A stretch of DNA of 64,000 bases from Macrostomum hystrix. Its lineage: Eukaryota > Animalia > Platyhelminthes. A program made the translations under genes and the position numbers. The notes below the pieces were generated by a model. The model did no database searches and was not told the DNA's origin. It saw nothing but the letters and a program-made list of their open reading frames with translations. Below, piece after piece: positions 9,565-61,499 of this stretch. The stretch is from contig CATNEN010000034.1 of NCBI GenBank assembly GCA_950097015.1, positions 7,626,001 through 7,690,000 of the forward strand. Reading direction: 5' to 3'. How positions within the stretch are numbered: position 1 is the stretch's first letter; every line of letters starts with the position of its first letter.

Positions 9565-11047
9565 ACAGCGCGCCTCTAACTCCTTTAGTGACTCAGCATA
9601 GCGACTTGAGACCCAACTTTCTGTCTATGGCCGGGACTACTCTCTCGTATTATAGATCGCATCTTTTTATTGCCCATTTTGTCAAAGCATAGAAAGATTC
9701 CCAGTAAGTTGAACGGGAGCTCACGAAATAGAATTTTAGAATCCCATGCATGGAGAACACAGCATTATTTATTACACAGCAGCTTTCTCTTTCGCTTCTA
9801 GCAAACAAAGAGCTGCATACAACGGACAAAGACTGTTTCCCATCACCATGCATCATCAGATGCGGGCATGAGGGCTAACCATTTCATGTTTTTATAATAA
9901 AAGGAATTAAATTGCATCAATTCTTTAATGACACCAAAAACATAACTTGCGAGCAAGATTGGGAAAACAAAAATTTAAACTCGTCCCTTGAGCAACAGAT
10001 TGTAGGATATTGTGAAGGATATGCTAACAGTTTTGTTCTTTCTAGAAACCTACATTTTTTCTTCTCGCAATCTCTTGTCACTTTTCAAAGCAAAATTTAG
10101 CTGTTATTTGCAACTTTTTTCTTCTAAAATAGCTACTAAAATGCACCAACTTTGGTTAGATGAAATTGAACTTAACTTGCTTTTCCTTGTTGCAAAATGG
10201 TAAATGATTAAAAATATGAATATTTTATGTCAGTAGGTACTCTATGCCCACAGTGAAGAATGCTGTCTTCAACCCATGCAATCCTTGTTTGTTTTGTTGC
10301 TTTTTTTCTCTATATTTTGTCTCTACTATTGAATTGCTGTTCAGCGCACCACTGCGAACTATTGCTTGCATTCACGGAAATCCTTACTGACAGTCATCGC
10401 AGTGTCGTGCATATATGAAAATACACTTATATACACTAACTCGCAACAGCGATCTTTCTTCGTAATTTAAATGCATCAAACGAAAATGTTCGAAATGAAA
10501 AGTTAAAGAAGAAGAAAATCATTTCATTTTAGGCTGGCTTCATAAATAATTTCAAATCATTAGAAATGTAACTGCATGCTCATTGACAACCACTGCATGT
10601 ATTGCTTGCTGCCTGGGTTGCACGGTGTGAAGTTGCAGTTTGAAGTGGCCTTCTACGAGCGATAGTTTGGGTGTCGTCTCTACTTGCACCCAATGAGTTC
10701 CTCTCTATCCATATATTGCTTTCGTGTCCTAACAGAATATGGCATTGTTGAATTGCATTTTTCTTGCTAGCAGCGCGCGAGGGAAGTCTTGGGCTCAATG
10801 AGACGGACTGAAATAGAGACGAGAGTGTCTGAAGGCAGATGCTTTGAGAGGCCTCTGTTGTGAGTCTTAGATTGAGAGAGACAGTTGGGAAGAATGCAGA
10901 GTATAATAGGAGCTTCTATGAGCTAAATTGCTCCAGGGGTCAGTGGAAATACAGTTGTTGAAACACGAAGTGTAGAACTTGCAGACTATAGGGATTTAGT
11001 CTGTCGTATCGAGTCTGATTGATTTTCTGTGCACAGAAAACTTATCA

Positions 11048-41674: not shown

Positions 41675-44600
41675 TCACAGTAGGAGTGTGATCCAGGCTA
41701 GAATCTCCCAGACTGGCGTGGCCAATGCGATATTGGATCTAGTGAGTCTGGAAAGTGTGAGAGCACAGGGGGTGTGTTGAGGTCAGCTGATGAAGCAGTC
41801 AACACCTGACTGCTGTAGCTGAAATTTCCCTCACTTGAACGTGTCAACAAGGCGCCTGAGATCGTCGCTGATGCAATCCAAACTGACGCCATTAATTTTA
41901 ACAGCCTTCGAGCTGACAAAAGCGGTCAGCTTCTCTTGAACAACTCGACGCCGCAGGGTCGCCTGACTGGCCGAATCGACTGGCGGCATGCGGCGCGGCA
42001 GCTGCTGATTCTCAGCCTCCTCTGTTAATGATAAACTGTTTTATTGTAAAATGCGCGAACTAAACTACTGCTGGCCTGTGCGCAAGTAGGCAAGTAACGA
42101 ATTTTAGCACATTTTTGTTGTTAACCCACAATTTATATTCTCGAATGTTAAGCAAAATACATTAAAGCAATGCATAAGGTAGGAGACAGACAGGAGAACA
42201 TTGTTAGACAGCGGAGTAAAACTGTTAGTCACCAGAATCAAACTGTCAGACAGGACAATCAAACTGTTAGACAGCAGAATCAAACTGTTAGACAGGACAA
42301 TCAAACTGTTAGACAGGACAATCAAACTGTTAGACAGGACAATCAAACTGTTAGACAGAAGAATCAAACTGTTAGACATGTTAAACATCGGAGTAATACC
42401 TTAAGACATAGAAGCGTTAACGCACTAACGTACAGAAGGTAAAAAATTACCTGCGCTAGAAGCAATACGTTCAACAATTTTCACTGCAGTTGCACTTTTA
42501 GAAGCGAGTTTCACGTCCGCTTTATCCATTGATAGCTTATCCTCTTTGCTAGTCAAAGGAGTTGCGACTTCGTTGCCTAGCAACCGAACAGTGTCCTTGG
42601 CAACGCTGCTATCAGACAATCTAGAGGCCGGCTTGGTAATTAGTCGCTTTCTAAGAAACAGTCTAGTTGCCTCGGTGAACCACTCGGCCGCAATGCTGAA
42701 GGCGGCGGCCTCGGGGGTAGCGCGTTGCGAAGCCAGGTTATCACAAGTCGACTCGACAACCTGCGGCGGGTTGGGCTGTACTAGCTTGTCTAGCCAGGCC
42801 AGACTTGGTTGTCGATTGCTACTTATACTACTTGCATTAGTACTGACAGCAGGAGCAGCAGTAGTGGTAGTAAGAGTAGTCGGTTTCTCTTCTTTTTCTT
42901 TGGCTTCAATGCGTAGAAGCTTATCCAAATCTTCAGCCAGAGGATCCAAGTTGACGGGATCGCCGGGAGTCGGCTGAACACTTGACAGCAATTGGGACAT
43001 CCGGGCGGCCGCTGACAATGCGGAATATGACGAAGCGTCATCCGTTCGAAGCCAAAGCGGCGTCTCCGGGATCAGGCGATCGTGAACGCAGGCCGACTGG
43101 GCGAAACAAATGTCTGAGCAGTAGCACTGTGTTGAGGAGGATGCGATTGGCGGACCTGTTAGTACCTGTGTTTGCCCACAGCACCTGTGTCTGTCCATAG
43201 TTAGTACCTGTGTTTGCCCACAGCACCTGTGTATGTCCACAGTTAGTACCTGTGTTTGCCCACAGCACCTGTGTCTGTCCACAGTTAGTACCTGTGTCTG
43301 TCCTCAGTTAGTACCTTTGTCTGTCCTCAGTTAGTACCTGTGTCTGCCTCAGTTAGTACCTGTGTCTGTCCTCAGTTAGTACCTGTGTCTGTCCACAGTT
43401 AGTACCTGTGTTTGCCCACAGCACCTGTGTCTGTCCACAGTTAGTACCTGTGTCTGTCCTCAGTTAGTACCTTTGTCTGTCCTCAGTTAGTACCTGTGTC
43501 TGTCCTCGTAGTCATGCCGTAGTCTAATAGCACTCACGTATCGCTTTGCCGGTCAATCTAATATGTACATATCACTAACTCTCGCTCACTATGTACATGC
43601 CCCCCACGCGCACGTTGATCGTATCGGTTGCACGTTAAGGCAAATATATAAATACTGTCTCGCCCTACTTGGAGGGCTCACCTTTTTCTTCGCACCTCAC
43701 ACAGCGTGACTCTTGAGCTATTACATTGGCGTCGCAAGGCCGAACCATGGCCTTCCTACAACTGCCTCCACCAGCCCACTTTAGCATCAGAGACGACCCT
43801 CACTCTGTAAGCAAGCGCTGGCAGGAGTGGTCGACCAACCTTCTGCGGTACCTGGCGGCAACCGGCATCAAAGATGAGACGCAGAAACGCCAGATCCTTC
43901 TGTATACGGCAGGCAAAGAAGTGAGCGACCTGTACAACGAGATCGCCACCCAGTCGCAGCAACAAGAAGGCGAGCCCGCAGCCGAGCCCACGGTCGACCA
44001 GCTGATCGCACAGTTCAGCACGCACTTCCAAGGCCGCGATAACGTCGTCTTCATTCGATACCAGTTTCGCCACTGTCTCCAGGAAGAAGGCGAATCCATA
44101 GACGCTTGGCACAGCAGACTGTGGAGCGCCTCGGAAACCTGCAAGTTCGAGGGTCTCCGCCAGTCGCTCATCAGGGACCAAATCGTGGCCAGCTGTCGCA
44201 GCGAGTCACTGAGGAAGCGCCTGCTGAATATCCCCAACATCAGCCTGTCGGACACTCTCCAGCTGGCCAGGACGCACGAGGCAGCAGAGAAGCAGGCGGC
44301 CATCATGACCAGGACAGCGGCAGCCTCTGAGGAAGTGGCGCAACTGCGCCGCCAGCGCCACCCGCTGCCGGAACCTTCGCGTGAGTCGCAGCAATTTGCT
44401 AAGTGCATCCGGTGCGGCGAGCTGGGCCACAAGAGCTGCAGCAGGGCGCAAGGCAAGCGATGCAGCAGCTGCGGCAAGGCCAACCATCTGGCCAAGGCCT
44501 GCCTCAGCAGCCGCTCGAAGATTAACTCACTGCAGCCCGAGCAGGACCAGTCAGCCGACCAACCACCCAACGAGGTGTTCTGCACGCTCAGCGGCAAGGA

Positions 44601-47600
44601 CGACAGCGCCAAGTTCGTCATCAGAATCAACGGCAGTCCGGTCCGCACACTGATCGACAGCGGAGCGAGCTGCAACGTGTTGGACATGGCGACGTTCCAC
44701 AGAATCTGCCGGCCCGGCACGCCGCTTTCGCCGTCCAGCACCACAGTCTTTGCGCTTGGTGCCAGCGAGCCACTGAAGACAGCCGGCCAAACAACGCTCA
44801 CTGTCAGAGCGAACCACCGCGAATTGCAGGCCAATTTCATCGTCATCAGCAGCAACTGCACACCGATTCTCGGAAGATCGTCCAGCACAAAGCTCGGCAT
44901 GCTGAGAGTCGGACCTGAAGTCAGCACGAACTCTGCGGTGGTGGCCAGCCTAGCTAAGCCGGCCAGCAGTGAGGACCAGCACCTGCCCAAGCAGCTGCAA
45001 CTTCAGACAATCCTGGCGGAATTCAGCGACTGCTTTCAAGGCATCGGATGCGTGAAGGGAGTCAGCGTCACTATCAGGCTCAGGCCGGATGCCACTCCAG
45101 TCTGCCAGCCGCCATCCCGAGTGCCCGTTCACCTAAGGAATGCTGTAATCAAGGAGCTGGAAGATCAACTGGCACTGGGAATCGTCGAACGAGTGCGTGG
45201 TCCAACAGCCTGGTGCTCCAGAATGGTCGCAGTTCCAAAGGCCGAGCAGGGCGAGGTTCGCATCACCCAGGACCTCCGCGAGGTGAACAAGTACGTCATC
45301 CCAGAGAAGCAGCCTATACCCACATTCGAAGAGGTGACGGACGAGATGGCGGGCGCGACGTATTTCTCGGAGCTGGACGTCGCCAAAGCCTTCCACCAAA
45401 TTGAAGTCGCCGAGGAGTCTAGAGACCTGCTAACGTTCTCCTCACCCATCGGGCTCCTGCGGCTGCGCCGGCTCTGCATGGGCTTCACATCCGCCTCCGA
45501 GATCCTCCAGCGGGTGATGACCTCCGTCCTGAGTGGCCTCCCCGGCGTCCGCTGGGTGCACGACGACATCCTGGTGTACGCGAAAAACATTGAAGAGCAC
45601 AACCAGCGCCTGCGAGACTGCCTGGCCCGGTTGAAGGCTAGCAACATCACGTTGAACCCCAAGAAGTGCCGCTTCGCCCGGCCAGAGGTCGACTTTCTCG
45701 CCATGCGGCTCTCTGCATGCGGCATTCACCCAAGCGCCGAGAAAGTAGCGGCCATCAACAACTTCAAGCGGCCGACCAACGCAACCGAGGTGCGCTCCTT
45801 CCTCGGCCTCGTCACCTTCGTAGCGCGCTTCATCAGCAACCTGTCTGACAGGGCCCGGCCACTCCGCGAGCTGACAAGGCAGGCCGCCGAGTGGACGTGG
45901 GGCGAAAAGCAAGAGGCCGCATTCAACGACATCAAACAGACGATCGCCAGCAGCCACGCGCTGGCATTCTTCAATAGTGAGCTGCAGACTCAGCTGATCG
46001 TGGACGCCAGCCCCACGGGTGTCGGCGCCATCCTTGCCCAAGTTCAGCCAGACGGATCGACGCGGCCGGTGGCATACGCGAGCCGCAGCCTCAGCCCGAC
46101 CGAGCAGCGCTACTCCCAGACGGAGCGAGAGGCCCTCGCGGTGAAGTACGGCGGCCTGAAGTTCTACCACTACCTCAGCGGGGGTGGCAGTTTCAAGGTC
46201 ATCACCGACCACAAGCCGCTGATATCCCTGTTCAGCACGGGGTCTCGGCCGCCACCCCGCATTGAGCGCATGGCGCTGCGACTGCAAGACCTTGTCTTTC
46301 GGGTCGTGTACCAGCCCGGCGCCGGCAACCCGTCTGACGTCCTGAGCCGCCAGCCGCTGCCAATGCCACCAAACAACGTCGGCGAGCAGGCGGACGCGAT
46401 CTACGTGGCCACGGCAGTCCAAGCTGCCACTCCGGTGTCCATCAGCCTGGGCACAATCAAGGCGGCCTCCGAACGAGACGGCACGGTACAAGCAGCGCTA
46501 CACGCCATCCGCGGCCACCAATGGGACAAGAGTGACACGTGCCTGCAGGGACTCCATGGCGTATCCCACGAACTATCCGAGCTGAACGGCCTGCTGCTGC
46601 GCGGCAGTCAGCTGTACATGCCGACGACTCTGCGATACCGGTGCATGCAGCTGGCCCACCAGGGACACCAGGGCGTCAAAAAAAACGCTCGACCGCTTGC
46701 AAGCGAAGGTCTGGTGGCCAGGCATGCGAGCATCCGTGGAGGCGCACGTAGCAGCCTGCACCAGCTGCCTGACCTGCACCAGCGAGACCTCGCCGAAAGC
46801 CACGCCGCTAAAGCCGACCGAACTGCCGGAGGGCCCCTGGCTCGAGCTGGGGCTCGACTTCCTCGGACCGATAAACGGCAAGTCGCTGCTCGTCTGTACG
46901 GACCACTTCTCCAGGTTCCCGCTCGTGGAGGTCATGGCCAGCACCACCGCCTCCGCCGTCATCAACGTGCTACGCAGGTGGTATAGCATCTTCGGGCAGC
47001 CGACAAAGGTGACCACAGACAATGGCCCACCCTTCGCATCGGCCGAGTTCAGCAGCTTCCTGATGGATCAGGGCGCACGGCACCATCGGATCACGCCTCT
47101 CTACCCTCAGGCCAACGGCGCAACGGAGCGGTGCAATCAAGGGCTGAACAAGGCTATCCGCGCAGCGATCGTCGAAGGCAGGGACTGGACACTGGCCCTG
47201 GACGAGTACCTGGCAGCGTACAGACGCACTCCGCACTGCTCCACGGGCGTCGCGCCGGCCAGTCTGTTATTTGGCAGGCAGATCAACGATGTGATCCCGA
47301 GTCTCCGACACTCGCAGCCCGTCGACGCGACTCGACCGGCCATTGCCGACAGCGACAGACAGGCCAAGGAGGCTATGAAGCGGCACGCCGACCGACGCTT
47401 CAGAGCCGCCGACCACGGCATTCGCGCCGGCGACCGCGTCCTCAGGCGCCAGCAGCCCCGGCAAAAGACCGACGCCTTCTACGAGTCGGCGCCGTGGACC
47501 GTGGCCGAGGTGCAAGGCGACTCCCTGCTCATGCAGCGCGACGACGTCGTCTGCCGCAGGCACGCCACGCAGGTCAAGCGGCTGCCCGGGCAGCCTGAGC

Positions 47601-50134
47601 AGTCCGATCAGCAGCCGCTCGAACCTCCCGACGCCCCTGAGCTCACGGAGCCAGTCGCAGCCCGGCTCCACCCACGGCGGGCGAAGGACCCAGAGAGGAA
47701 CTACAGAGAACCCGACCTGCGCAGAAGCTGAATTGCTTGATTGACAGACTAAAGTTACAAGGACTGTTCTAAAAACAATTATATTGTTGCCTGCTACTAC
47801 TTCTTTCATTTTATTCCCTTAATTTTTCATCCACTTGAGGAGGACTGTCATGCCGTAGTCTAATAGCACTCACGTATCGCTTTGCCGGTCAATCTAATAT
47901 GTACATATCACTAACTCTCGCTCACTATGTACATGCCCCCCACGCGCACGTTGATCGTATCGGTTGCACGTTAAGGCAAATATATAAATACTGTCTCGCC
48001 CTACTTGGAGGGCTCACCTTTTTCTTCGCACCTCACACAGCGTGACTCTTGAGCTATTACAGTTAGTACCTGTGTCTGTCCACAGTTAGTACCTGTGTCT
48101 GTCCTCAGTTAGTACCTGTGTCTGTCCTCAGTTAGTACCTGTGTCTGTTCTCAGTTAGTACCTGTGTCTGTCCACAGTTAGTACCTGTGTCTGTCCTCAG
48201 TTAGTACCTGTGTCTGTTCTCAGTTAGTACCTGTGTCTGTCCTCAGTTAGTACCTGTGTCTGCCTCAGTTAGTACCTGTGTCTGTCCTCAGTTAGTACCT
48301 GTGTCTGTCCACAGTTAGTACCTGTGTTTGCCCACAGCACCTGTGTCTGTCCACAGTTAGTACCTGTGTCTGTCCTCAGTTAGTACCTTTGTCTGTCCTC
48401 AGTTAGTACCTGTGTCTGTCCTCAGTTAGTACCTGTGTCTGTCCACAGTTAGTACCTGTGTCTGTCCTCAGTTAGTACCTGTGTCTGTCCTCAGTTAGTA
48501 CCTGTGTCTGTCCTCAGTTAGTACCTGTGTCTGTTCTCAGTTAGTACCTGTGTCTGTCCACAGTTAGTACCTGTGTCTGTCCTCAGTTAGTACCTGTGTC
48601 TGTTCTCAGTTAGTACCTGTGTCTGTCCTCAGTTAGTACCTGTGTCTGTCCTCAGTTAGTACCTGTGTCTGTCCTCAGTTAGTACCTGTGTCTGTCCTCA
48701 GTTAGTACCAATTTATGCCTGTCCTTAAAAATCTTAACAATGATTGAAATAGTCGAGAGAAATTTTAAAAGTATATATTTGTCCGAAAGTTTATATGAAT
48801 CAACAATTTAATTCATTTTCAATACATATAGGACAAGTCGAAACAATCGTCACCTTTCGCCGCGTCAAATCGTAGACTCGCCTTGTGGAGGCCACAATCC
48901 TGTAGCGCTGCTTGGCCTGTAGGCCGCTGTCGCCGGGCGAGCGAAGAGGGGAGGCGCACAATGGGAAGCCGCAGTTGCCTGACAGGTTCCGCTCAGTCAC
49001 CGCGTCTGTGTAGTGCTGCCGGCTCAGAAACACCAGCTTGGTTGAAGGTCAGGGTGGCTCACATAGCTTAATCCCTTCAAAGCGATCTTCAGCCTCCCTT
49101 CAACCCGATCTCCAACCTCCCTTCAAGCCAATCCCCAACCTCCCTTCAACCCGATCCCCAACCTACCTTCAACCCGATCCCCAACCTCCCTTCAACACGA
49201 TCAACAACCTACCTTCAACACGATCCCCAACCTCCCTTCAACCAGATCCCCAACCTCCCTTCAATACGATCCCCAACCTACCTTCAACACGATCCCCAAC
49301 CTACCTTCAACCCGATCCCCAACCTACCTTCAACCCGATACCCAACCTCCCTTCAATCCGATCAACAACCTACCTTCAACATGATCCCCAACCTCCGTTC
49401 CACCCGATCCCCAACCTACCTTCAACCCGATCCCCAGCCTCCCTTCAACTGTACTGACAACTGGAACTGGTTCTGAGAACTGGAGAACGCAGTTCTCCAA
49501 CCCGATCCCCAGCCTCCCTTCAACACGATCCCAACCTCCCTTCAACCCGCTCCCCAACCTCCCTTCAACCCGCTCCCCAACCTCCCTTCAACACGATCCC
49601 CAAACTCCCTTCAACCCGCTCCCCAACCTCCCTTCAATACGATCCCCAACCTACCTTCAACCCGCTCCCCAACCTCCCTTCAATACGATCCCCAACCTAC
49701 CTTCAACCCGCTCCCCAACCTCCCTTCAATACGATCCCCAACCTCCCTTCAACCAGATCCCCAACCTCCCTTCAACCAGATCCCCAACCTCCCTTCAACC
49801 AGATCCCCAACCTCCCTTCAACCAGATCCCCAACCTCCCTTAAACCAGATCGCCAAACTCCATTCAAGCCGATCTCCAGCCTCCCTTCAAGCCGGCCTTC
49901 CCCAGTATAACTCACAGTCATGGCCAAGTACTGCGCTGTCACGCATCCGTCGGCAGCCAGCTGTTCAACGATGCCAACTGCGCGTGAGTCGCACATTCTT
50001 TGACGTCTGGCCGTGATTTGAAAGGCCCGGCTATTGGCCCCGGCCCCGGCAGCCGCTGCTGCCGCCACCTTCGGCGGAATGACGTGGTCGCGAGCAGCCG
50101 CTGACGGAGCAGGCTTTGCCGCGGCGGCAGACAT
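41675..50134 (-). CDS. RPAP2: RNA polymerase II-associated protein 2 (RPAP2/Rtr1 CTD phosphatase); complement join(50134..49916,49036..48854,43126..42451,42021..41835,41747..~41675); 3' end unresolved
   Basis: Spliced translation contains RAVGIVEQL...QYL, HYTDAVTERNLSGNCGFPLC...YRIVASTRRVYDLTRRK|CYCSDICF...IPETPLWLR (Rtr1/RPAP2 zinc-binding domain) and MPPVDSASQATLRRRVVQEKL...LRRLVDTFKLTRSNIALATPVWEIL (RPAP2 C-terminal region), recognised from memory of the human protein. Introns are GT-AG with phases 0,0,1,2. Confidence 0.88.
42195..42377. repeat. Minisatellite, 21-bp unit AATCAAACTGTTAGACAGGAC x~8 (RPAP2 intron 3)
   Basis: Directly visible. Confidence 0.9.
43157..43507. repeat. Minisatellite, 23-bp unit AGTTAGTACCTGTGTCTGTCCTC (left arm, RPAP2 intron 2)
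   Basis: Directly visible; interrupted by the LTR element. Confidence 0.95.
43510..43725 (+). repeat. 5' LTR (216 bp)
   Basis: Direct repeat of 47846..48061; ends ...GCTATTACA; begins AG rather than TG; contains TATATAAATA. Confidence 0.93.
43727..43739 (+). other. Primer-binding site of the LTR element
   Basis: TGGCGTCGCAAGG, 1 nt after the 5' LTR; TGG is complementary to the tRNA CCA end. The cognate tRNA could not be assigned. Confidence 0.7.
43747..47731 (+). CDS. Gag-Pol polyprotein (~1327 aa after removing one A at 46678-46685)
   Basis: Knuckles CIRCGELGHKSC and CSSCGKANHLAKAC; protease LIDSGAS; RT LDVAKAFHQI and VHDDILV; RNase H VDASPTG, YSQTERE and TDHKPL; integrase HQGHQG..CTSC, LDFLGP, TDNGPPF and NGATER. 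Split into two ORFs by an 8-A run where 7 As would keep the frame. Confidence 0.9.
47837..47845 (+). other. Polypurine tract of the LTR element
   Basis: GAGGAGGAC immediately before the 3' LTR. Confidence 0.65.
47846..48061 (+). repeat. 3' LTR (216 bp)
   Basis: TGTCATGCC...GCTATTACA with canonical TG...CA termini. Confidence 0.95.
48062..48708. repeat. Same 23-bp minisatellite (right arm)
   Basis: Resumes immediately after the 3' LTR. Confidence 0.96.
49073..49900. repeat. Minisatellite, 23-bp unit CCTCCCTTCAACCCGATCCCCAA (RPAP2 intron 1)
   Basis: Directly visible, with a short unique interruption at ~49450-49495. Confidence 0.93.
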
Positions 50135-50234
50135 GATGACCGCAGTGGAGACTTTATACAAAGTTATTTAAACTAGACTAGAAAATTCGTCTGCAATGAT
50201 TTCGCCCATTTACATTTAGTATTGCAATGTCTTT

Positions 50235-52546: not shown

Positions 52547-55500
52547 CTACAAGTAGTCAGTAACAAAGTACTCAACAATGCGACCATATTTTTGCTCACA
52601 AACAGGAGCTGGCTCTTCAGTCCTAACCGACTGCATTCCAACAATATCGGCCAGATTGGCTGTAAACAAACAGTCACCATGGTTACTAGGGTTGTCAATT
52701 TTTCCTTCGGCTGTCAAGGCCTCCAAGCGCAGCTCAACTGAGGCGTCATCGTCGGCCCGATGCGCCAGACAGCGGACTCGACCGCGTCTGCCATCGCTAA
52801 GATTAACAATGTCGCCTAAGCGAACTCGGCCGACTGCAGTCGAGTCGTTGCGTTGGGTGCCGTCGATAGGAAGGATCGCCTTTGAATTCGAAAGTTGATG
52901 CTGCGGTTCTTCACGACGATGCTGATTTGCGGAACACCTGACAGGGATTTTTTTACAGATAATAGATTTACTATTTAGATCCCATTTTGAGAATTGCGCT
53001 TTGAATATACTACCGAAACCAAATCAGATCCACCATCGGGGGACTTTAGTTCGCTAAAAAGGGATTCAAGAACAGATTCTAGGTGGCATAAAATCCATAA
53101 TCGGTGACTATAAATTAACCTAATCAGTGACTATACATATACCTAATCGATAACAATGTAAATTTACCAAATCGGTGACGGTAAATTTACCAAATCGGTG
53201 ACAGTGAATTTACCTAATCGGTGACAGTAAAGTTACCTAATCGGTGACAGTAAAGTTACCAAATCGGTGACAGTGAATTTACCTAATCGGTGACTGTGAA
53301 TTTACCTAATCGGTGACTGTGAATTTACCTAATCGGTGACTGTGAATTTACCAAATCGGTGACAGTGAATTTACCTAATCGGTGACAGTAAAGTTACCTA
53401 ATCGGTGACAGTAAAGTTACCAAATCGGTGACAGTGAATTTACCTAATCGGTGACTGTGAATTTACCTAATCGGTGACAGTGAATTTACCAAATCGGTGA
53501 CTGTGAATTTACCAAATCGGTGACAGTAAATTTACCTAATCGGTGACTGTAATATTACCTAATCGGTGACAGTAAATTTACCTAATCGGTGACAGTGAAT
53601 TTACCAAATCGGTGACAGTGAATTTACCTAATCGGTGACAGTAAATTTACCTAATCGGTGACAGTGAATTTACCTAATCGGTGACTGTGAATTTACCTAA
53701 TCGGTGACTGTGAATTTACCTAATCGGTGACTGTGAATTTACCAAATCGGTGACAGTGAATTTACCTAATCGGTGACAGTAAAGTTACCTAATCGGTGAC
53801 AGTAAAGTTACCAAATCGGTGACAGTGAATTTACCTAATCGGTGACTGTGAATTTACCTAATCGGTGACAGTGAATTTACCAAATCGGTGACTGTGAATT
53901 TACCAAATCGGTGACAGTAAATTTACCTAATCGGTGACTGTAATATTACCTAATCGGTGACAGTAAATTTACCTAATCGGTGACAGTGAATTTACCAAAT
54001 CGGTGACTGTGAATTTACCTAATCGGTGACTGTGAATTTACCAAATCGGTGACTGTGAATTTACCAAATCGGTGACAGTGAATTTACCTAATCGGTGACA
54101 GTAAAGTTACCTAATCGGTGACTGTAATATTACCTAATCGGTGACAGTGAATTTACCTAATCGGTGACTGTGAATTTACCAAATCGGTGACAGTGAATTT
54201 ACCTAATCGGTGACTGTGAATTTACCAAATCGGTGACAGTGAATTTACCTAATCGGTGACAGTAAATTTACCTAATCGGTGACAGTAAATTTACCTAATC
54301 GGTGACAGTGAATTTACCAAATAGGTGACTGTGAATTTACCAAATCGGTGACAGTGAATTTACCTAATCGGTGACAGTAAAGTTACCTAATCGGTGACAG
54401 TAAAGTTACCAAATCGGTGACAGTGAATTTACCTAATCGGTGACTGTGAATTTACCAAATCGGTGACAGTGAATTTACCTAATCGGTGACTGTGAATTTA
54501 CCTAATCGGTGACAGTAAATTTACCAAATCGGTGACAGTAAATTTACCTAATTAGTGACGGTAAATTTACCTAATCGGTGACAGTAAATATACCTAATCG
54601 GTGACTGTAATATTACCTAATCGGTGACTGTAATAGTACCTAATCGGTGACAGTGAATTTACCAAGTCGGTGACAGTAAATTTACCTAATCGGTGACTGT
54701 AATATTACCTAATCGGTGGCTGTAATATTACCTAATCGGTGACTGTGAATTTACCTAATCGGTGACAGTAAATTTACCAAATCGGTGACAGTAAATTTAC
54801 CTAATTAGTGACTGTAAATTTACCTAATCGGTGACAGTAAATATACCTAATCGGTGACTGTAATATTACCTAATCGGTGACTGTAATAGTACCTAATCGG
54901 TGACAGTGAATTTACCAAGTCGGTGACAGTAAATTTACCTAATCGGTGACTGTAATATTACCTAATCGGTGGCTGTAATATTACCTAATCGGTGACAGTA
55001 AATTTACCTAATCGGTGACTGCAAATTTACCTAATCGGTGGCTGTAAATTTACCTAATCGGTGGCTGTAAATTTACCTAAGCTGTAAATTTACCTAATCG
55101 GTGACTGTGAATTTACCTAATCGGTGACTCCTTTCGACCGCGCCGCTTCGCTTCACAACTGGTCGCCGCAGCCTCAGCCCTGGCCAACTGACGCGTCGCC
55201 CTGGCCAAAGCCACCGCCAGCGTCTTGTTCAACTGCATCGCATGCCGTAGTTCTTCGCCGCCATCGTCATGTAGGCCGGACTCCGCTTTCATCAGTTCGC
55301 ATTGAGTTCCCTGTGACAAAGACGCAGTCGTTGAAGTAGATGGAGAAGTAGATGGAGACGGCGTCAAAGAACTACGCGATCTAGACTCCAGAGAAGAATT
55401 TGAGGCGGCCGCCGAGCAGGCGGCGCGCAGAGCGGCATTCTCGGCCGACACTAGGCGCAGCCGCAGCTCCAGGGCGCGCTGCCGCCGAAGCAGGTCGGCA

Positions 55501-55670
55501 ACGTCAGAGCACAGCGTGACAATGCCGCGCCGCGAGCTGTCGATCACCATGGCAACCGCGCGAGCGGCCAGACGCTTCTCCTCTTCGTCCTCTGCCTGAC
55601 GCGCATCTCGACCGCTATCGACGTAGGCATAGTCCGCCAGGGTGGCTGCGGGCCTCTGCTGTCGCGCTTG
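52547..55670 (-). CDS. Uncharacterised coiled-coil protein with degenerate CAP-Gly-like C-terminal domain; complement join(55670..55117,52937..52547); no start exon found
   Basis: Acceptor ttttcccaccgcattgcag|CAA at 55671, phase-2 donor AG|GTAAAT at 55116 and acceptor ccctgtcag|G at 52938 join 554+391 nt into an uninterrupted 314-codon frame ending ...YGRIVEYFVTDYL*. Both exons are GC-rich. The second exon is absent from the ORF track in this frame. Confidence 0.7.
53100..55128. repeat. Minisatellite, 23-bp unit ATCGGTGACAGTAAATTTACCTA x~88 (fills an intron)
   Basis: Directly visible. Confidence 0.98.
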
Positions 55671-55724
55671 CTGCAATGCGGTGGGAAAACTAATTGAGGA
55701 AAAACAGCAGATAAACAACAACTC

Positions 55725-56128
55725 TTGAAGGATTAACAGCAGACACAACCAACAACTCTTGAAGGATTAACAACAGACACAACCAACAACTCTTGAAGGA
55801 TTAACAACAGGCTCAACCAACAACTCTTGAAGGATTAACAACAGACACAACCAACAACTCTTGAAGGATTAACAACAGACTCAACCAACAACTCTTGAAG
55901 GATTAACAACAGACTCAACCAACAACTCTTGAAGGATTAACAACAGGCACAACCAACAACTCTTGAAGGATTAACAACAGACTCAACCAACAACTCTTGA
56001 AGGATTAACAACAGACTCAACCAACAACTCTTGAAGGATTAACAACAGACACAACCAACAACTCTTGAAGGATTAACAACAGACTCAACCAACAACTCTT
56101 GAAGGATTAACAACAGACACAACCAACA
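55725..56128. repeat. Minisatellite, 34-bp unit AACAACTCTTGAAGGATTAACAACAGACACAACC x~12
   Basis: Directly visible. Confidence 0.96.
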
Positions 56129-56731
56129 ACCCTAAAGGACAAATAACAGACACTGTAGGACACTAAAAGACGGACAAAAGATGCAGTACAAACAACTAGA
56201 CGCAAAATTGACTTGTAAAGCTATATTAGACGGACGTTAAAATAGTCAGCTTTCAAAAAACAGATCATATAATATATATTTGTTTTGAAATATAGCCAGG
56301 GAGTTAAAGGACACAATATAAAGGGTATTTATTTTAGACTGCAAGATCTCATTCTCAGATGTTTATAAGTACTAATTAGCTCAATACTTCTAGAAAGCAG
56401 AAATGATGTGGTTAGACTTAAACTAGACACACACTTAACCGGCTTATGCTATTACAATAATTAATTAAACACAAATGGTCATAGCGCGTTGTGTTATGCA
56501 AGGGAAAATTTTTCTAGCGTCACTTTCAGTTTTCAGAGTAGATAATTATTTGTAGATACTACTAATAGTATGGCACTACTAACAAAATCTACGATGCTTG
56601 AAAAAAACCCAGGTCATTGCCAACCACAAACTAAATGATAGATAATATTAGACGTAGGGCCGGCAAAAGCCAACTCATTAGTTAATATTGTCCCGTCCAG
56701 ATGCACACAGAGAATACGGACCGAAATCATT

Positions 56732-57397
56732 CTAGGCCTTGCCCAACCGTTTCATCTCGGCTAGCATCAGCTGGCCCATCTGGGCTGGCGATTTCGACAC
56801 TACAACTCCGGCCGCCTCCAGCGCGGCGATCTTCTCCTTGGCGCCGCCTTTGCCGCCGGCTATGATGGCGCCGGCGTGGCCCATTCGACGGCCGGGTGGC
56901 GCGGTGACACCGGCGATGAATGACACAACGGGCTTGGCATTGCTGCCCCTGTTGTGCTCCATCAGGTACTCGGCCGCGCTCTCCTCGGCTTGGCCGCCAA
57001 TCTCGCCAATGAGAACAATGCCCTCAGTTTTGGGATCTTTCAGGAAGATTTCCAGACAGTCGATAAAGTTGGTGCCGTTGAATGGATCGCCGCCGACGCC
57101 GATGCACAGGGTCTGGCCGAGACCGGTCACCTGCAGTCCGGGTTGATGGGTTGATGTATTTCAAGTACCCACTGCCCAGTTCACTTCGTGACAGTCCACC
57201 ATCTAAATAAAAATTTTCCACCCCTTAACGACGAACTAACTTTCAAAGCCGTCCGACGTCAGCATCGTCGAGATAGTCAGCGATTCTTGTCGAAGACGTG
57301 TATAAACCTCATTGGCGAATCCAAATAGGTTCAAAAATAAAAATTTGGGTATTCGATATTCCCCCGAAGTCTTTCTACTGTCTACTTTCTACTTTCT

Positions 57398-57431
<34 letters not shown>

Positions 57432-59895
57432 TACTACTAAGGGAAATATGGGATCTTTTAGGGAATTTATGGTATTTCGTGGAATATCACAAACTGGCTA
57501 TTGTTTGGGATAAATTTAGTAACTATTTAGTGGCTAGGGCGTCATACTCGCTACTTGAAGATCGGGGGTTCGATTCCTGAGTTCGCTGGAACAAATTGAG
57601 TCCTTTATCAATACATTTAACTCTGTATTGCTTCGGTTCGCCCAGCTATTAATTGGGTACCAAGCTTTAGCTGTAGTACTTTAGGGTCGGTGTGCAATAC
57701 GTAGCTAAGGCTGTGCTGTAGACTAAACACACAGACAATCCAGGTAGCCTTTCTTAGAATCCTACTGACAATAGTTTAGGGGATTGATGGTATCTGTGGG
57801 GATTATAATAGAAAAAAAATAGTTTCTTGTGAATTGATGCAATTTTTGTGCTATTGGCTGTCACTTAGATATCATAACAAGGATGGAATTATTAGAACCC
57901 AGATAATTTAGTGGAATTTTTAATCCACTAAAAATCACAAAATTGATCAGAAAAACAAAAAGGTCACTCACAGTGGTCTGATGCACAGCCTCGTAAGTCA
58001 GGGTGCCGGACCTGGACACAATGCCAATCTTGCCAGGCCGGTGAATATGACCCGGCATGATGCCAATCTTGCACTGGCCTGGAGCAATGATGCCGGGACA
58101 ATTGGGACCAATCAGGCGACTCTTGGACTGCCTGCTGAGCCGGTGCCGCACCCTGACCATGTCGTGCTGCGGAATGCCCTCCGTGATGCACACTATCAGC
58201 GGCACCTCGGCGTCCAAGGCTTCGTGAATAGCGGCGGCGGCGAATGGGGCCGGCACGTAAATCACAGTGGCGTCGCATTGGGTGGCTTTGCGAGCCTCAG
58301 TAACAGTATTGAAGACGGGCAAGTTCAGGTGCTTCTGGCCGCCTTTGCCTGGCGACACACCGCCAACTACCTTGGTGCCGTACTCTATGGCCTGAGTGCT
58401 GTGGAAGGTGCCCTGCGGTGAGGTTTGAGTTATGGGTGTCAGCGCTGTGGAATCTACATATTCACGAAACAATGGGAGCTAGATATTCACTAATGAGTGG
58501 GATCTAGATATTCACTAATGAGTGGGATCTAGATATTCACTAATGAGTGGGATCTAGATATTCACTAATGAGTGGGATCTAGATATTCACTAATGAGTGG
58601 GATCTAGATATTCACTAATGATTGGGATCTAGACATTCACCAATGAGTGGGATCTAGATATTCACTAATTATTGGGATCTAGATATTCACTAATGAGTGG
58701 GATCTAGATATTCACTAATGAGTGGGATCTAGATATTCACTAATGAGTGGGATCTAGATATTCACTAATGAGTGGGATCTAGATATTCACCAATGAGTGG
58801 GATCTAGATATTCACTAATGAGTGGGATCTAGATATTCACTAATGAGTGGGATCTAGATATTCACTAATGAGTGGGATCTAGATATTCACTAATGAATGG
58901 GATCTAGATATTCACTAATGAGTGGGATCTAGATATTCACTAATGATTAGGATCTAGATATTCACTAATGATTAGGATCTAGATATTCACTAATGAGTGG
59001 GATCTAGATATTCACTAATGAGTGGGATCTAGATATTCACTAATGAGTGGGATCTAGATATTCACTAATGAGTGGGATCTAGATATTCACCAATGATTGG
59101 GATCTAGATATTCACTAATGAGTGGGATCTAGATATTCACCAATGATTGGGATCTAGATATTCATTAATGATTGGGATCTAGATATTCACAAATGAGTGG
59201 GATCTAGATATTCACTAATGAGTGGGATCTAGATATTCACTAATGAGTGGGATCTAGATATTCACTAATGATTGGGATCTAGATATTCACTAATGAGTGG
59301 GATCTAGATATTCACTAATGAGTGGGATCTAGATATTCACTAATGAGTGGGATCTAGATAGTCACCAATGAGTGGGATCTAGATATTCACTAATGAGTGG
59401 GATCTAGATAGTCACCAATGAGTGGGATCTAGATATTCACCAATGATTGGGATCTAGATATTCACTAATGAGTGGGATCTAGATATTCACCAATGAGTGG
59501 GATCTAGATATTCATTAATGAATGGGATCTAGATATTCACTAATAAGTGGGATCTAGATATTCACCAATGAATGGGATCTAGATATTCACTAATGAGTGG
59601 GATCTAGATATTCACTAATGAATGGGATCTATAATAGATATTCACTAATGAGTGGGATCTAGATAGCCACTAATGAGTGGATTTAAGTATTAGAAATCAA
59701 TCAATCATGGGTTTAAGGTGTCAGAAATCGATGGGTAAGACTCACTTGCTTGCCAGTGAAACCCTGACAGATGACCTTGGTGTCCTTGTTAATCTTCAGA
59801 TTTGGCCTAGTAGCAACATAGTCAGACAAAAGTCGGTTGGTTGCTAGGCGGGACTGGCGAACAGCCACCAATAAGCGACAAGATACAAACGACAT
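56732..59895 (-). CDS. SUCLG1: Succinate--CoA ligase subunit alpha, mitochondrial, 329 aa; complement join(59895..59746,58412..57972,57130..56732)
   Basis: [12 protein letters not shown]|[61 protein letters not shown] and the phospho-His motif [11 protein letters not shown]. The Arg/Ser-rich N-terminus fits a mitochondrial targeting peptide. Two phase-0 GT-AG introns. Confidence 0.97.
57372..57436. repeat. Short TTCTACT/TTC low-complexity repeat
   Basis: Directly visible. Confidence 0.8.
57524..57730 (+). mobile_element. Diverged, internally deleted copy of the same SINE, antisense in SUCLG1 intron 2
   Basis: B box GGTTCGATTCC at 57567-57577; TTTAACTCTGTATTGCTTCGGTTCGCCCAGCT matches the CORE-like segment of the 61.5-kb copy. 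Confidence 0.75.
58478..59682. repeat. Minisatellite, 25-bp unit GATCTAGATATTCACTAATGAGTGG x~48 (SUCLG1 intron 1)
   Basis: Directly visible. Confidence 0.98.
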
Positions 59896-61499
59896 GTTTC
59901 CCTAAATGAGCTGTGGAAATGTAAATTAGGTAATTTATTAAATATTTGAACTTTATTAAAAATAAATTAAAGGCATGTCTTTGACTTCACTACAGAATTT
60001 ATTTTCAGCTCAACCTTAATAAAACCATTTTAGAAAATGCTAATGCAAATTCTAATGAATCAAAATCACATTCGTAAAAAAATATTTTTTTTTACTTTTA
60101 GTTTTGAGAACTTAATTAAATGTGATATAGAAGTTTATTCATAAGGCTAGGGCATTTAATTAACCTGAAACTTTATGAGTATGGACTCGTCATTAAAACT
60201 AGATAAAATATCAGAATCCAAAAAGTAATTTCTCTGCATAGACTGAAAAAATTTCCTTTAAAGCATTAATAGAGTTTGACATCAATTTATTATAAATAAA
60301 TTTTTGCTTAAGAAAGTAAGTAACTTTCTAAGAGTTGGACAGTGTTACATTTTTTTCCCATAAAGATTAGCCTTTATAGGTATGAGTTGCTTGAAAACAG
60401 CAATTCTAACTTATCAACCTGAATAAACCTTATTCAATAGAGTATTTATAATTGAAATAGTTTTTTAATTCCAAAGCACAATTGTCATTTTTGCACAAAG
60501 TTCATGGACATGCAATTAAAAAAGGTGCCAGAGACATGTGTACACAAAAATGTTTTTGTCCTATAGGGCAGTGCACTATACCACACATCCACCCACACAA
60601 AATGGCAGGCAATGTGCAATGTTGCCCTGCCCTTTTAGTTGTTTACACAATTTAATTACACATATATAATTGCATAAGGCCTACATATATTCGAAACAAG
60701 CTTACAGTTTTACAAAAAAAAAGATTTCTATTTTATAGATGACTTGAAATATAGATTATAGTTATACTAAACAGTCTTTAACTTAGATGCTAGCATTTTT
60801 TATAAGAATCTGAGAAAAAAATTAAATTCTGCACACTATAATCATAATTACCATAGAAAATTCGCTTAAAAAACTAGTCGCATTTTAATTGTAATGAAAA
60901 CGTTTTCTTTTAGTATTAAAGTGAACCTTATTTGCATTTCTATAATCATCATCAACCACCAAAATGATTCTATCAACATTCGCAGTTATAATTTTAGGAT
61001 TCGGTGTTTTGTGATAATTCAGGAGGGCTAAGCTAGATCCACAAACAAATACTTTATAATCGTATACAATATAAATATAAAGCTCAAGTCTCTTCTTCAT
61101 TTTAAAGTGCAATAAGAATCAGCTCAAATTGCAATAATTACATTTAATCACGTATTGACAGTAAAAAGCATTTCTTCTTACTTATTTAATAATAAAAAAA
61201 CAATTATTATTACTACAGGGATGCGTAGCAATTTTTTATCTGTCTATGTATAAGCAAATGTTTTGATTTGTTATATAATATTTTAGATCTATATTCCGGT
61301 GGTTTTACTGATAAGATAACTAAATATCGAGGTTCCGTTTTAAGTTTTTTCCTGTGTCTAACAGATTACAGCGTCTGAGGGAATTTACAGCTACAAGAAA
61401 ACAATTAAATAAAAGACAACGAGATGTTTTCTCCATCTTGACGAAATTATGACGAAGGTTCCGAATCCCAACAAGCTTGAATATTCATGCATCATGCAT

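What the first reader, a model, noticed from the sequence alone, without database searches (positions are those of the whole stretch)
55560..56330. Gene with no start exon: the initiator AUG may come from the spliced leader, or it is an alternative 3' end of SUCLG1
Seen: a strong acceptor at 55671 opens directly into the reading frame in phase 0. No exon-like sequence lies between it and SUCLG1, and the first ATG in the exon is out of frame. Established: flatworm spliced leaders end in AUG, which can serve as the initiator. SL-AUG + CAA GCG CGA gives an in-frame 315-aa protein. Alternative: both SUCLG1 donors are also phase 0, so splicing 57972->55670 would give an in-frame SUCLG1(1-197)-coiled-coil-CAP-Gly-like chimera with a mitochondrial targeting peptide. 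A third option is initiation at the internal Met (AMVIDS).
Basis: partly seen in the sequence, partly recalled or inferred. Interest (0 to 1): 0.72.

Follow-up and report, generated by a model that had tools for sequence, protein, structure and literature searches.

The report
Orphan gene borrowing the spliced-leader AUG
A small Macrostomum-only gene just downstream of SUCLG1 has no start codon of its own and most likely takes it from the AUG that ends the trans-spliced leader, which is a further example of a flatworm mechanism known since 2006.

Summary
On the minus strand a complete three-exon SUCLG1 (59895-56732) is followed by a two-exon gene "X": exon A 55670-55117 and exon B 52937-52550.

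- **Start of the frame:** X's reading frame opens at base 1 after a TTGCAG acceptor. The first in-frame ATG is codon 41.
- **No upstream exon:** The 1,061-base spacer holds no consensus GT[AG]AG donor and no usable ATG-plus-donor exon.
- **Only relative:** One real relative turned up among 1.84 billion representative proteins. It is M. lignano PAA58653.1, annotated "partial" with no Met, in the same SUCLG1-X-RPAP2 order.
- **Same layout in M. lignano:** There too the first YTNCAG acceptor is in phase 0 and no in-frame ATG precedes the conserved Met.
- **Coding upstream of the Met:** The ten codons before that Met are identical at protein level. Their only three base changes are synonymous, although silent sites are otherwise near saturation. 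Translation must therefore start upstream of the Met.
- **Best reading (about 0.7):** The spliced leader is joined at 55671 and its AUG is the initiator. X is probably the middle gene of an operon-like trio.

The SUCLG1 chimera and the internal-Met start are disfavoured. The "CAP-Gly-like" label is not supported. This scan has already reported RNA-confirmed cases of the same mechanism elsewhere in this genome.

The parts
55671..55688 (-). Pyrimidine tract plus acceptor (ttttcccaccgcatTGCAG) of gene X. This is the proposed SL trans-splice site, with the AG at 55672-55671.
   Evidence: Read directly. It matches the [T/C]TNCAG motif reported at M. lignano trans-splice sites (PMC8629364). G+C jumps from 0.40 to 0.68 here.
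55117..55670 (-). Gene X exon A: 184 codons plus 2 nt, with no in-frame ATG before codon 41. Further in-frame CAG acceptors would start the exon at 55658 or 55655.
   Evidence: Translation. It is 54% identical to M. lignano PAA58653.1 over 157 residues, E 5e-21. Overall pN 0.27 against pS 0.67. Acceptor list.
55551..55580 (-). Codons 31-40 (EKRLAARAVA), just upstream of the first genomic ATG. They are conserved as protein sequence.
   Evidence: 10/10 residues are identical to M. lignano. The three base differences are all synonymous third positions, and all are non-synonymous in frame +1 (and by eye).
55548..55550 (-). First in-frame genomic ATG (Met41). This is the rival start codon.
55544..55630 (-). 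Frame +1 upstream ORF. It runs from ATG 55630 for 28 codons to TGA 55546-55544 and overlaps the Met41 codon.
   Evidence: Read. A scanning ribosome that skipped the SL AUG would meet this ATG first.
55716..56153 (-). 34-bp minisatellite (12.9 copies) in the outron. A decayed copy continues to 55688.
56154..56731 (-). SUCLG1 3' UTR and spacer, with an AATAAA at 56333. There is no exon-like sequence and no GT[AG]AG.
   Evidence: Nothing here is alignable with the M. lignano spacer.
53098..55116 (-). Phase-2 intron of gene X, filled by a 23-bp tandem repeat. Its donor GTAAAT is at 55116. The intron as a whole runs 52938-55116.
   Evidence: The M. lignano gene has its intron at the same position and phase.
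52547..52937 (-). Gene X exon B: 1 nt plus 129 codons plus the TAG stop. The C-terminal VEYFVTDYL is conserved.
   Evidence: It is 40% identical to the PAA58653.1 C-terminus, E 2e-16. Alignment.
56732..59895 (-). Complete SUCLG1 gene with exons 59895-59746, 58412-57972 and 57130-56735, and a stop at 56734-56732.
   Evidence: Pfam CoA_binding 1.3e-25 and Ligase_CoA 2.2e-25. All three exons are 74-85% identical to M. lignano.
50132..50192 (-). 5' end of RPAP2, the next gene downstream on the same strand. It has a TTGCAG acceptor (AG 50192-50191) and its own ATG at 50134.
   Evidence: The layout in M. lignano is the same.

Best explanation
Gene X is a real, fast-evolving protein-coding gene found so far only in Macrostomum. 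It encodes a coiled-coil region, a Ser/Thr-rich linker and a small C-terminal beta-rich domain. It lies between SUCLG1 and RPAP2 on the same strand.

Its pre-mRNA carries no first exon of its own. The spliced leader (SL), which in M. lignano ends in ...UUGCAUG, is trans-spliced to the TTGCAG acceptor at 55671. It may also be spliced to the in-frame CAGs 12 and 15 nt downstream. The terminal AUG of the leader then sits directly in front of CAA GCG CGA and serves as the initiator. The product is a 315-residue protein starting M-Q-A-R-Q-Q-R-P.

X is probably transcribed as part of, or right behind, the SUCLG1 transcription unit, with the SL resolving the transcript. That would make it an operon-like arrangement.

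Shown here: the anatomy, the lack of any genomic start, conservation of the layout in a second species, and coding constraint upstream of the first genomic ATG. Inferred: that the SL is joined here, which AG is used, that its AUG is the one used, and co-transcription with SUCLG1.
For: 1. Phase-0 acceptor and a 314-codon frame with no in-frame ATG before codon 41.
2. No GT[AG]AG donor and no plausible ATG-plus-donor exon in the 1,061-base spacer. Nothing in the spacer is conserved with M. lignano, while every exon of SUCLG1 and of X is.
3. The only true relative is M. lignano PAA58653.1, annotated 'partial' with no Met, in the same SUCLG1-X-RPAP2 order.
4. In M. lignano the first acceptor, cactCCAG|CAG (exon start L001 9989), fits YTNCAG and is in phase 0. 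So are the next two CAGs. No in-frame ATG precedes the conserved Met. The N-termini read Q-A-R-Q-Q-R-P here and Q-R-Q-R-P there.
5. Codons 31-40 have pN 0 and pS 0.33, with three synonymous changes only. Gene-wide pS is 0.67, and the neighbouring UTRs are unalignable. Frame 0 is therefore translated upstream of Met41.
6. G+C is coding-like (0.63-0.68) from the first exon base in both species. It is 0.28-0.40 in the flanking outron and the local UTRs.
7. The M. lignano SL ends in ATG. In that species, 30% of genes are trans-spliced and the acceptor motif is [T/C]TNCAG (PMC8629364). Use of the SL AUG as initiator is established in Schistosoma (Cheng et al. 2006, cited in PMC9851317).
8. The annotated 5' ends of all three M. 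lignano genes can each be placed directly after an AG. That is what SL-read-defined gene boundaries would give (TBONE pipeline, PMC5730564).
Against: - Two word searches with exon A found no transcript-derived protein from this species.
- The M. lignano CDS begins at L001 10001. That fits a transcript starting at 10000, after the AG at 9998-9999. There the SL AUG would be out of frame and open only a 20-codon ORF. The same cagAG|G exists here, giving an exon start at 55653.
- Codons 1-30 are poorly conserved (pN 0.44-0.48), so their coding status rests on frame, composition and length only.
- The SL AUG context (U at -3) is weak. In the neighbouring M. lignano SUCLG1 the SL AUG is out of frame, so SL AUGs are evidently often bypassed.
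- The SL sequence of this species was not checked here.
Confidence: 0.7

Rival explanations
1. X is SL trans-spliced, but the SL AUG is not its initiator. The leader is joined mainly at an out-of-frame AG (cagAG|G, exon start 55653), or its weak-context AUG is skipped. The protein then starts at Met41 (274 residues) or at a near-cognate codon such as CTG, codon 11.
For: The annotated start of the M. lignano CDS (L001 10001) fits a 5' end at 10000, after the out-of-frame AG. The CAGAGGCC string is conserved in both species. SL AUGs are out of frame in most trans-spliced flatworm mRNAs; only 28% are in frame in S. mansoni (PMC9851317).
Against: Codons 31-40 upstream of Met41 show only synonymous changes, and those changes are non-synonymous in the other frame. 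GAG| is a poor acceptor, while the YTNCAG acceptor is 17 nt (here) and 11 nt (M. lignano) upstream. The CTG codon is not conserved in M. lignano. A ribosome that skipped the SL AUG would first meet the frame +1 ATG at 55630. If the annotation pipeline cuts at every SL site, the annotated end only marks the most downstream site used.
Confidence: 0.13
2. X has an ordinary first exon carrying an ATG that went unrecognised. It could be a very short or non-canonical-donor exon in the spacer, or an exon further upstream.
For: Short first exons are easily missed. One earlier follow-up in this genome found exactly that for one claimed case (note s1-316733).
Against: The window spacer has no GT[AG]AG. 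M. lignano has only one, and it does not follow an in-phase ATG. No block is conserved between the two spacers. The M. lignano gene model is 5'-partial and starts at the acceptor cluster.
Confidence: 0.08
3. Exons A and B are an alternative 3' end of SUCLG1. Splicing 57972 to 55670 would give a SUCLG1(1-197)-X chimera with a mitochondrial presequence.
For: Both SUCLG1 donors are strong (GTGAGT) and in phase 0, so the product would be in frame. The genes are adjacent and co-oriented in two species. A read-through pre-mRNA would make this splice possible.
Against: SUCLG1 is complete and conserved through exon 3, with its own stop and AATAAA. The chimera would cut the enzyme after the CoA-binding domain. 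The M. lignano annotation gives two separate genes. Frame compatibility alone has a 1-in-3 chance.
Confidence: 0.03

Closest known systems
Flatworm mRNAs that use the 3'-terminal AUG of the spliced leader as initiator (Cheng, Cohen, Ndegwa and Davis, J Biol Chem 2006; cited in PMC9851317)
   Same: An ATG-less first exon opens in phase 0 at a trans-splice-type acceptor. The leader of the genus ends in AUG (M. lignano SL, PMC8629364). No other in-frame start is available.
   Different: It was shown experimentally in Schistosoma mansoni. Here it is inferred from two genomes, with no RNA or translation data. The recipient is a genus-restricted orphan gene rather than a conserved one.
SL-resolved operons of Macrostomum lignano (Wudarski et al. 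2017, PMC5730564; Ustyantsev and Berezikov 2021, PMC8629364)
   Same: The neighbouring genes are co-oriented and functionally unrelated (SUCLG1, X, RPAP2). Downstream genes begin at YTNCAG acceptors. The repeat-adjusted spacer is under 1 kb and filled with a minisatellite, as those authors describe.
   Different: Polycistronic transcription was not shown here. The raw spacers (1.06 and 2.36 kb) are long compared with the roughly 100-bp mode reported.
Other SL-AUG cases reported by this scan in the same genome (CHMP6, NDUFA5, SFMBT, PPP2R3C; notes s1-408126, s1-408140, s1-327261, s1-310532)
   Same: Same genome and same layout, with the first codon directly after an acceptor.
   Different: Those notes report RNA assemblies showing the junction. 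I could not obtain that for this gene, and I did not re-check those notes.

Membership tests
mRNA with SL-donated initiator AUG | The organism trans-splices a leader whose last three bases are AUG | not testable with these tools
   This is published for M. lignano, whose 35-nt SL ends ...TTGCATG (PMC8629364). For this species it rests only on earlier unchecked notes. No SL RNA gene lies in the window.
mRNA with SL-donated initiator AUG | The SL is joined to this acceptor in mature mRNA | not testable with these tools
No transcript-derived protein turned up in the word searches.
mRNA with SL-donated initiator AUG | The acceptor is in phase 0 with the long ORF | tested here: met
   Exon starts 55670, 55658 and 55655 here, and 9989, 9992 and 9998 in M. 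lignano, are all in phase 0 with an open frame.
mRNA with SL-donated initiator AUG | No genomic in-frame AUG is available upstream of sequence that is demonstrably coding | tested here: met
   The first in-frame ATG is codon 41 here and codon 45 in M. lignano. Codons 31-40 are 10/10 identical, with three synonymous changes only. The frame upstream of the acceptor has no ATG before its stop.
mRNA with SL-donated initiator AUG | No upstream cis exon supplies the start | tested here: met
   This is sequence evidence only.
SL-resolved operon (M. lignano criterion of PMC8629364) | Adjacent genes on the same strand, downstream gene trans-spliced, repeat-adjusted distance under 1 kb | tested here: inconclusive
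   Orientation is met. The distance from the SUCLG1 stop to the acceptor is 1,061 nt, less the 438-nt tandem repeat, which gives 623 nt. From the AATAAA it is about 200 nt. Trans-splicing of X is itself inferred.
SL-resolved operon (M. lignano criterion of PMC8629364) | A single polycistronic precursor RNA | not testable with these tools
CAP-Gly domain (PF01302) | A match to the family profile and a conserved GKNDG-type motif | tested here: not met
   Pfam gives no hit at E<=1 for exon B, and none for the full M. lignano protein at E<=5. The GKIDNPSNHGD string falls in a gapped, unconserved stretch of the alignment. The AlphaFold2 model has pLDDT 36, so no fold comparison was made.
Succinyl-CoA ligase alpha subunit (SUCLG1), the upstream gene | CoA_binding plus Ligase_CoA domains in one complete ORF | tested here: met
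   E-values 1.3e-25 and 2.2e-25. The gene has three exons, 329 codons and its own stop.

The most novel reading that the evidence does not exclude
SUCLG1, X and RPAP2 are one polycistronic unit. The run of in-frame CAG acceptors at the start of X (CAG|CAA..CAG|CAG|AGG here, CAG|CAG|CGC CAG|AGG in M. lignano) is kept by selection so that wobble in trans-splice site choice never breaks the frame of the borrowed AUG. In addition, a fraction of the read-through precursor is cis-spliced from SUCLG1 exon 2 to X exon A, which would send a version of X to mitochondria.
Probability: 0.04. Interest if true: 0.6.

Novelty: new member of a known kind. Interest (0 to 1): 0.3.

Why it matters
- **Annotation:** gene finders that demand a genomic ATG will truncate this protein by 40 residues or call it partial, as GenBank does for the M. 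lignano orthologue.
- **A case that is hard to explain otherwise:** there is no in-frame ATG in two species whose silent sites are near saturation, yet protein-level constraint runs upstream of the first genomic ATG. That makes it a good test gene for SL-AUG initiation in Macrostomum, where transgenesis exists.
- **Limits:** the mechanism itself is known, and this scan has already reported RNA-confirmed examples of it in this genome.

Tried and rejected
- **Word searches:** searches with exon A (184 aa) and with its first 75 aa found nothing. A search with the M. lignano protein found only that protein itself.
- **Big HMMER search with exon B:** it gave one true relative and two repeat-driven chance hits, P0001 and P0003.
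- **Family and structure searches:** Pfam, PDB sequence search and both ESM Atlas look-ups gave no family.
- **Structure prediction:** AlphaFold2 on exon B gave pLDDT 36, so no fold search was run.
- **Gene id:** Mlig015549 was not found in the full text of the library or in the held supplements of three papers. PMC8629364 has no supplements held as text.
- **SL RNA gene:** none in the window.
- **tRNA scan:** the tRNA-like string in SUCLG1 intron 2 scored negative.
- **Earlier notes by sequence:** blank.
- **Joined model left out:** following the operators' rule, the joined (spliced) 315-residue model was never built or searched. Exons were searched separately by reference.
- **Rejected readings:**
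  - CAP-Gly domain: the membership test failed.
  - Internal-Met-only start: the changes upstream of the Met are synonymous only.
  - Unspliced transcript with its own start: the frame upstream of the acceptor has no ATG.

Full report
**Anatomy**

Everything relevant lies on the minus strand.
- SUCLG1 is a complete three-exon gene: 59895-59746, 58412-57972 and 57130-56735, with its stop at 56734-56732.
- It has Pfam CoA_binding (1.3e-25) and Ligase_CoA (2.2e-25) domains.
- Both of its donors are GTGAGT in phase 0, and an AATAAA lies at 56333.

Gene X follows 1,061 bases after the SUCLG1 stop.
- The tract ttttcccaccgcatTGCAG ends at 55671, and a reading frame opens at 55670.
- The frame runs 184 codons plus 2 nt to a GTAAAT donor at 55116.
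- It crosses a 2.2-kb intron filled with a 23-bp tandem repeat.
- It resumes at 52937 and stops at 52549-52547, giving 314 genomic codons.
- The first two ATGs in exon A are out of frame. The first in-frame ATG is codon 41, at 55550.

**Is there a hidden first exon?**
- The spacer 56731-55671 contains no GT[AG]AG, which is the donor consensus reported for M. lignano (PMC8629364).
- It holds only six ATG-to-GT in-phase combinations, all with poor donors.
- Its G+C is 0.32-0.40, like the local UTRs (0.27-0.35). G+C jumps to 0.68 at the first base of exon A.
- 438 bases of the spacer are a 34-bp minisatellite. A decayed last copy reaches to 17 nt before the AG.
- Reading the frame upstream through the acceptor gives no ATG before the next stop. 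An unspliced transcript would therefore not supply a start either.

**Relatives**
- Exon A found nothing in the word-indexed protein search.
- Exon B, run against 1.84 billion representative proteins with HMMER, found one real relative. It is P0002, or PAA58653.1, named 'hypothetical protein BOX15_Mlig015549g1, partial' from Macrostomum lignano.
- It matches exon A at 54% identity (E 5e-21) and exon B at 40% (E 2e-16). It shares the C-terminal VEYFVTDYL.
- Searching with P0002 returned only P0002 itself.
- Pfam, PDB sequences and the ESM Atlas give no family.
- An AlphaFold2 model of exon B is unusable, with pLDDT 36.

X is therefore a genus-restricted orphan gene. The 'CAP-Gly-like' idea fails both the profile test and the motif-conservation test. 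Overall pN is 0.27 against pS 0.67, so it is a real gene under purifying selection.

**The M. lignano locus** (L001, NIVC01002350.1)
- It has the same order and orientation: SUCLG1 (332 aa), X (347 aa) and RPAP2.
- A blastn comparison of the two loci aligns only five blocks: the three SUCLG1 exons, the core of exon A and the end of exon B. Nothing in the spacers aligns, so there is no conserved upstream exon.
- The M. lignano protein has no Met at its start.
- The genomic sequence there reads ...tcactCCAG|CAG|CGC CAG|AGG CCT.... The first acceptor fits YTNCAG and gives an exon start at 9989.
- That acceptor and the next two CAGs are all in phase 0 with the ORF.
- No in-frame ATG occurs before the conserved Met (codon 45 there).
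- With an SL AUG the N-termini would read M-Q-A-R-Q-Q-R-P here and M-Q-R-Q-R-P there. The codons for R, Q, R and P differ only at synonymous sites.
- Taking a 1-in-3 phase chance and the measured chances of an open frame (0.47 and 0.42), the first YTNCAG acceptor being in phase and open in both species has a joint chance of about 0.02.

**Where does translation start?**
- The two species are far apart. pS is 0.54-0.78 along the gene, and the UTRs of the neighbouring genes do not align.
- Against that background, the ten codons just upstream of the first genomic ATG (EKRLAARAVA) are identical as protein.
- They differ at three bases, all third-position and synonymous. The same three changes are non-synonymous in frame +1.
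- With about 9 of the 30 sites synonymous, this pattern has a chance of about 0.03.
- Frame 0 is therefore translated upstream of Met41, which argues against the internal-Met option.
- The only in-frame CTG/GTG-class near-cognate codon here, CTG at codon 11, is not conserved.
- A ribosome that skipped the leader AUG would first meet the frame +1 ATG at 55630. That ATG opens a 28-codon ORF ending on top of the Met41 codon.
- The only conserved source of an in-frame AUG is a leader joined at one of the CAG acceptors.

**Background from papers**
- The 35-nt M. lignano SL ends ...TTGCATG (PMC8629364).
- In that species 30% of genes are trans-spliced, and the top motif at trans-splice sites is [T/C]TNCAG.
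- Operons there are called when the repeat-adjusted distance is under 1 kb.
- The M. lignano gene models were cut at sites defined by SL-containing reads, using the TBONE pipeline (PMC5730564).
- Use of the flatworm SL AUG as initiator was shown in 2006 by Cheng et al., cited in PMC9851317.
- Earlier notes of this scan report RNA-confirmed cases of the same kind in this genome, namely CHMP6, NDUFA5, SFMBT and PPP2R3C. I did not re-test them.

**A caveat from the annotation**

In M. lignano the annotated coding ranges of SUCLG1, X and RPAP2 start at 6477, 10001 and 13739. Each fits a transcript that begins directly after an AG (6473-74, 9998-99 and 13737-38). That supports 5' ends defined by trans-splicing.

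For X, however, that AG (cagAG|G) is the one out-of-frame site of the cluster. I read this as the most downstream of several SL sites being kept when a transcription unit is cut at every site. That reading is my inference. It keeps alive the rival in which the SL AUG is out of frame.

**Operon question**
- The distance from the SUCLG1 stop to the acceptor of X is 1,061 nt. It is 623 nt without the minisatellite, and about 200 nt from the AATAAA.
- The distance from X to the RPAP2 acceptor (50191) is 2.36 kb, of which 1.4 kb is tandem repeat.
- RPAP2 has a TTGCAG acceptor 57 nt before its own ATG in this species, and an equivalent one in M. lignano.
- The trio fits the published operon criterion, but co-transcription was not shown.

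**SUCLG1 chimera**

It would truncate a conserved enzyme, it needs exon 3 and the poly(A) site to be skipped, and it appears in no gene model. I give it about 3%.

**Limits**
- The species name rests on earlier notes.

**Verdict**

This is a sound, comparatively supported new example of a known flatworm mechanism. Confidence is about 0.7 and interest is modest.

Noticed in passing
window 55688-56153 (minus strand); L001 9360-9843: The 34-bp minisatellite upstream of gene X is built from the 3' end of the outron itself. A decayed copy runs to 17 nt before the acceptor AG, and every unit carries a TTAAT and a CAAGAG. M. lignano has an unrelated 24-bp array at the equivalent place. Its X intron and its X-RPAP2 spacer also hold arrays unrelated to those here.
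   Followed up: partly
window 59893-59911; L001 6470-6488: The 5' end of SUCLG1 reads catttAG|GGAAACATG here, which would put an SL AUG in frame and add M-G-N. In M. lignano, attttAG|CCTGGTCAGCCATG puts the SL AUG out of frame, opening an ORF that overlaps the real start. The M. lignano CDS is annotated from the first full codon after that AG.
   Followed up: partly
window 50132-50192; L001 13730-13823: RPAP2 begins at a TTGCAG acceptor 57 nt before its own ATG. In M. lignano the annotated 5'-partial CDS starts right after a second AG (caacaAG|ACA). There an SL AUG would be in frame with a 27-codon extension.
   Followed up: partly
window 55544-55630 (minus strand): A frame +1 upstream ORF of 28 codons ends at a TGA overlapping the Met41 codon (CCATGGTGA). 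The same overlap string is conserved in M. lignano.
   Followed up: partly
window about 57545-57660, in SUCLG1 intron 2: This stretch looks like the reverse complement of a tRNA T-arm and acceptor (ggaatcgaaccc...), perhaps a tRNA-derived SINE. ARAGORN calls no tRNA there.
   Followed up: partly
window 43726-47731 (+ strand): Long ORFs (1,086 and 344 aa) carry retroelement-type protease, reverse-transcriptase and integrase-looking motifs. They apparently sit inside an intron of the minus-strand RPAP2 gene. This was judged by eye only.
   Followed up: no
window 53098-55128: The intron of X is about 88 copies of a 23-bp unit that repeats the exon-end and donor string (CCGATTAG|GTAAAT).
   Followed up: no
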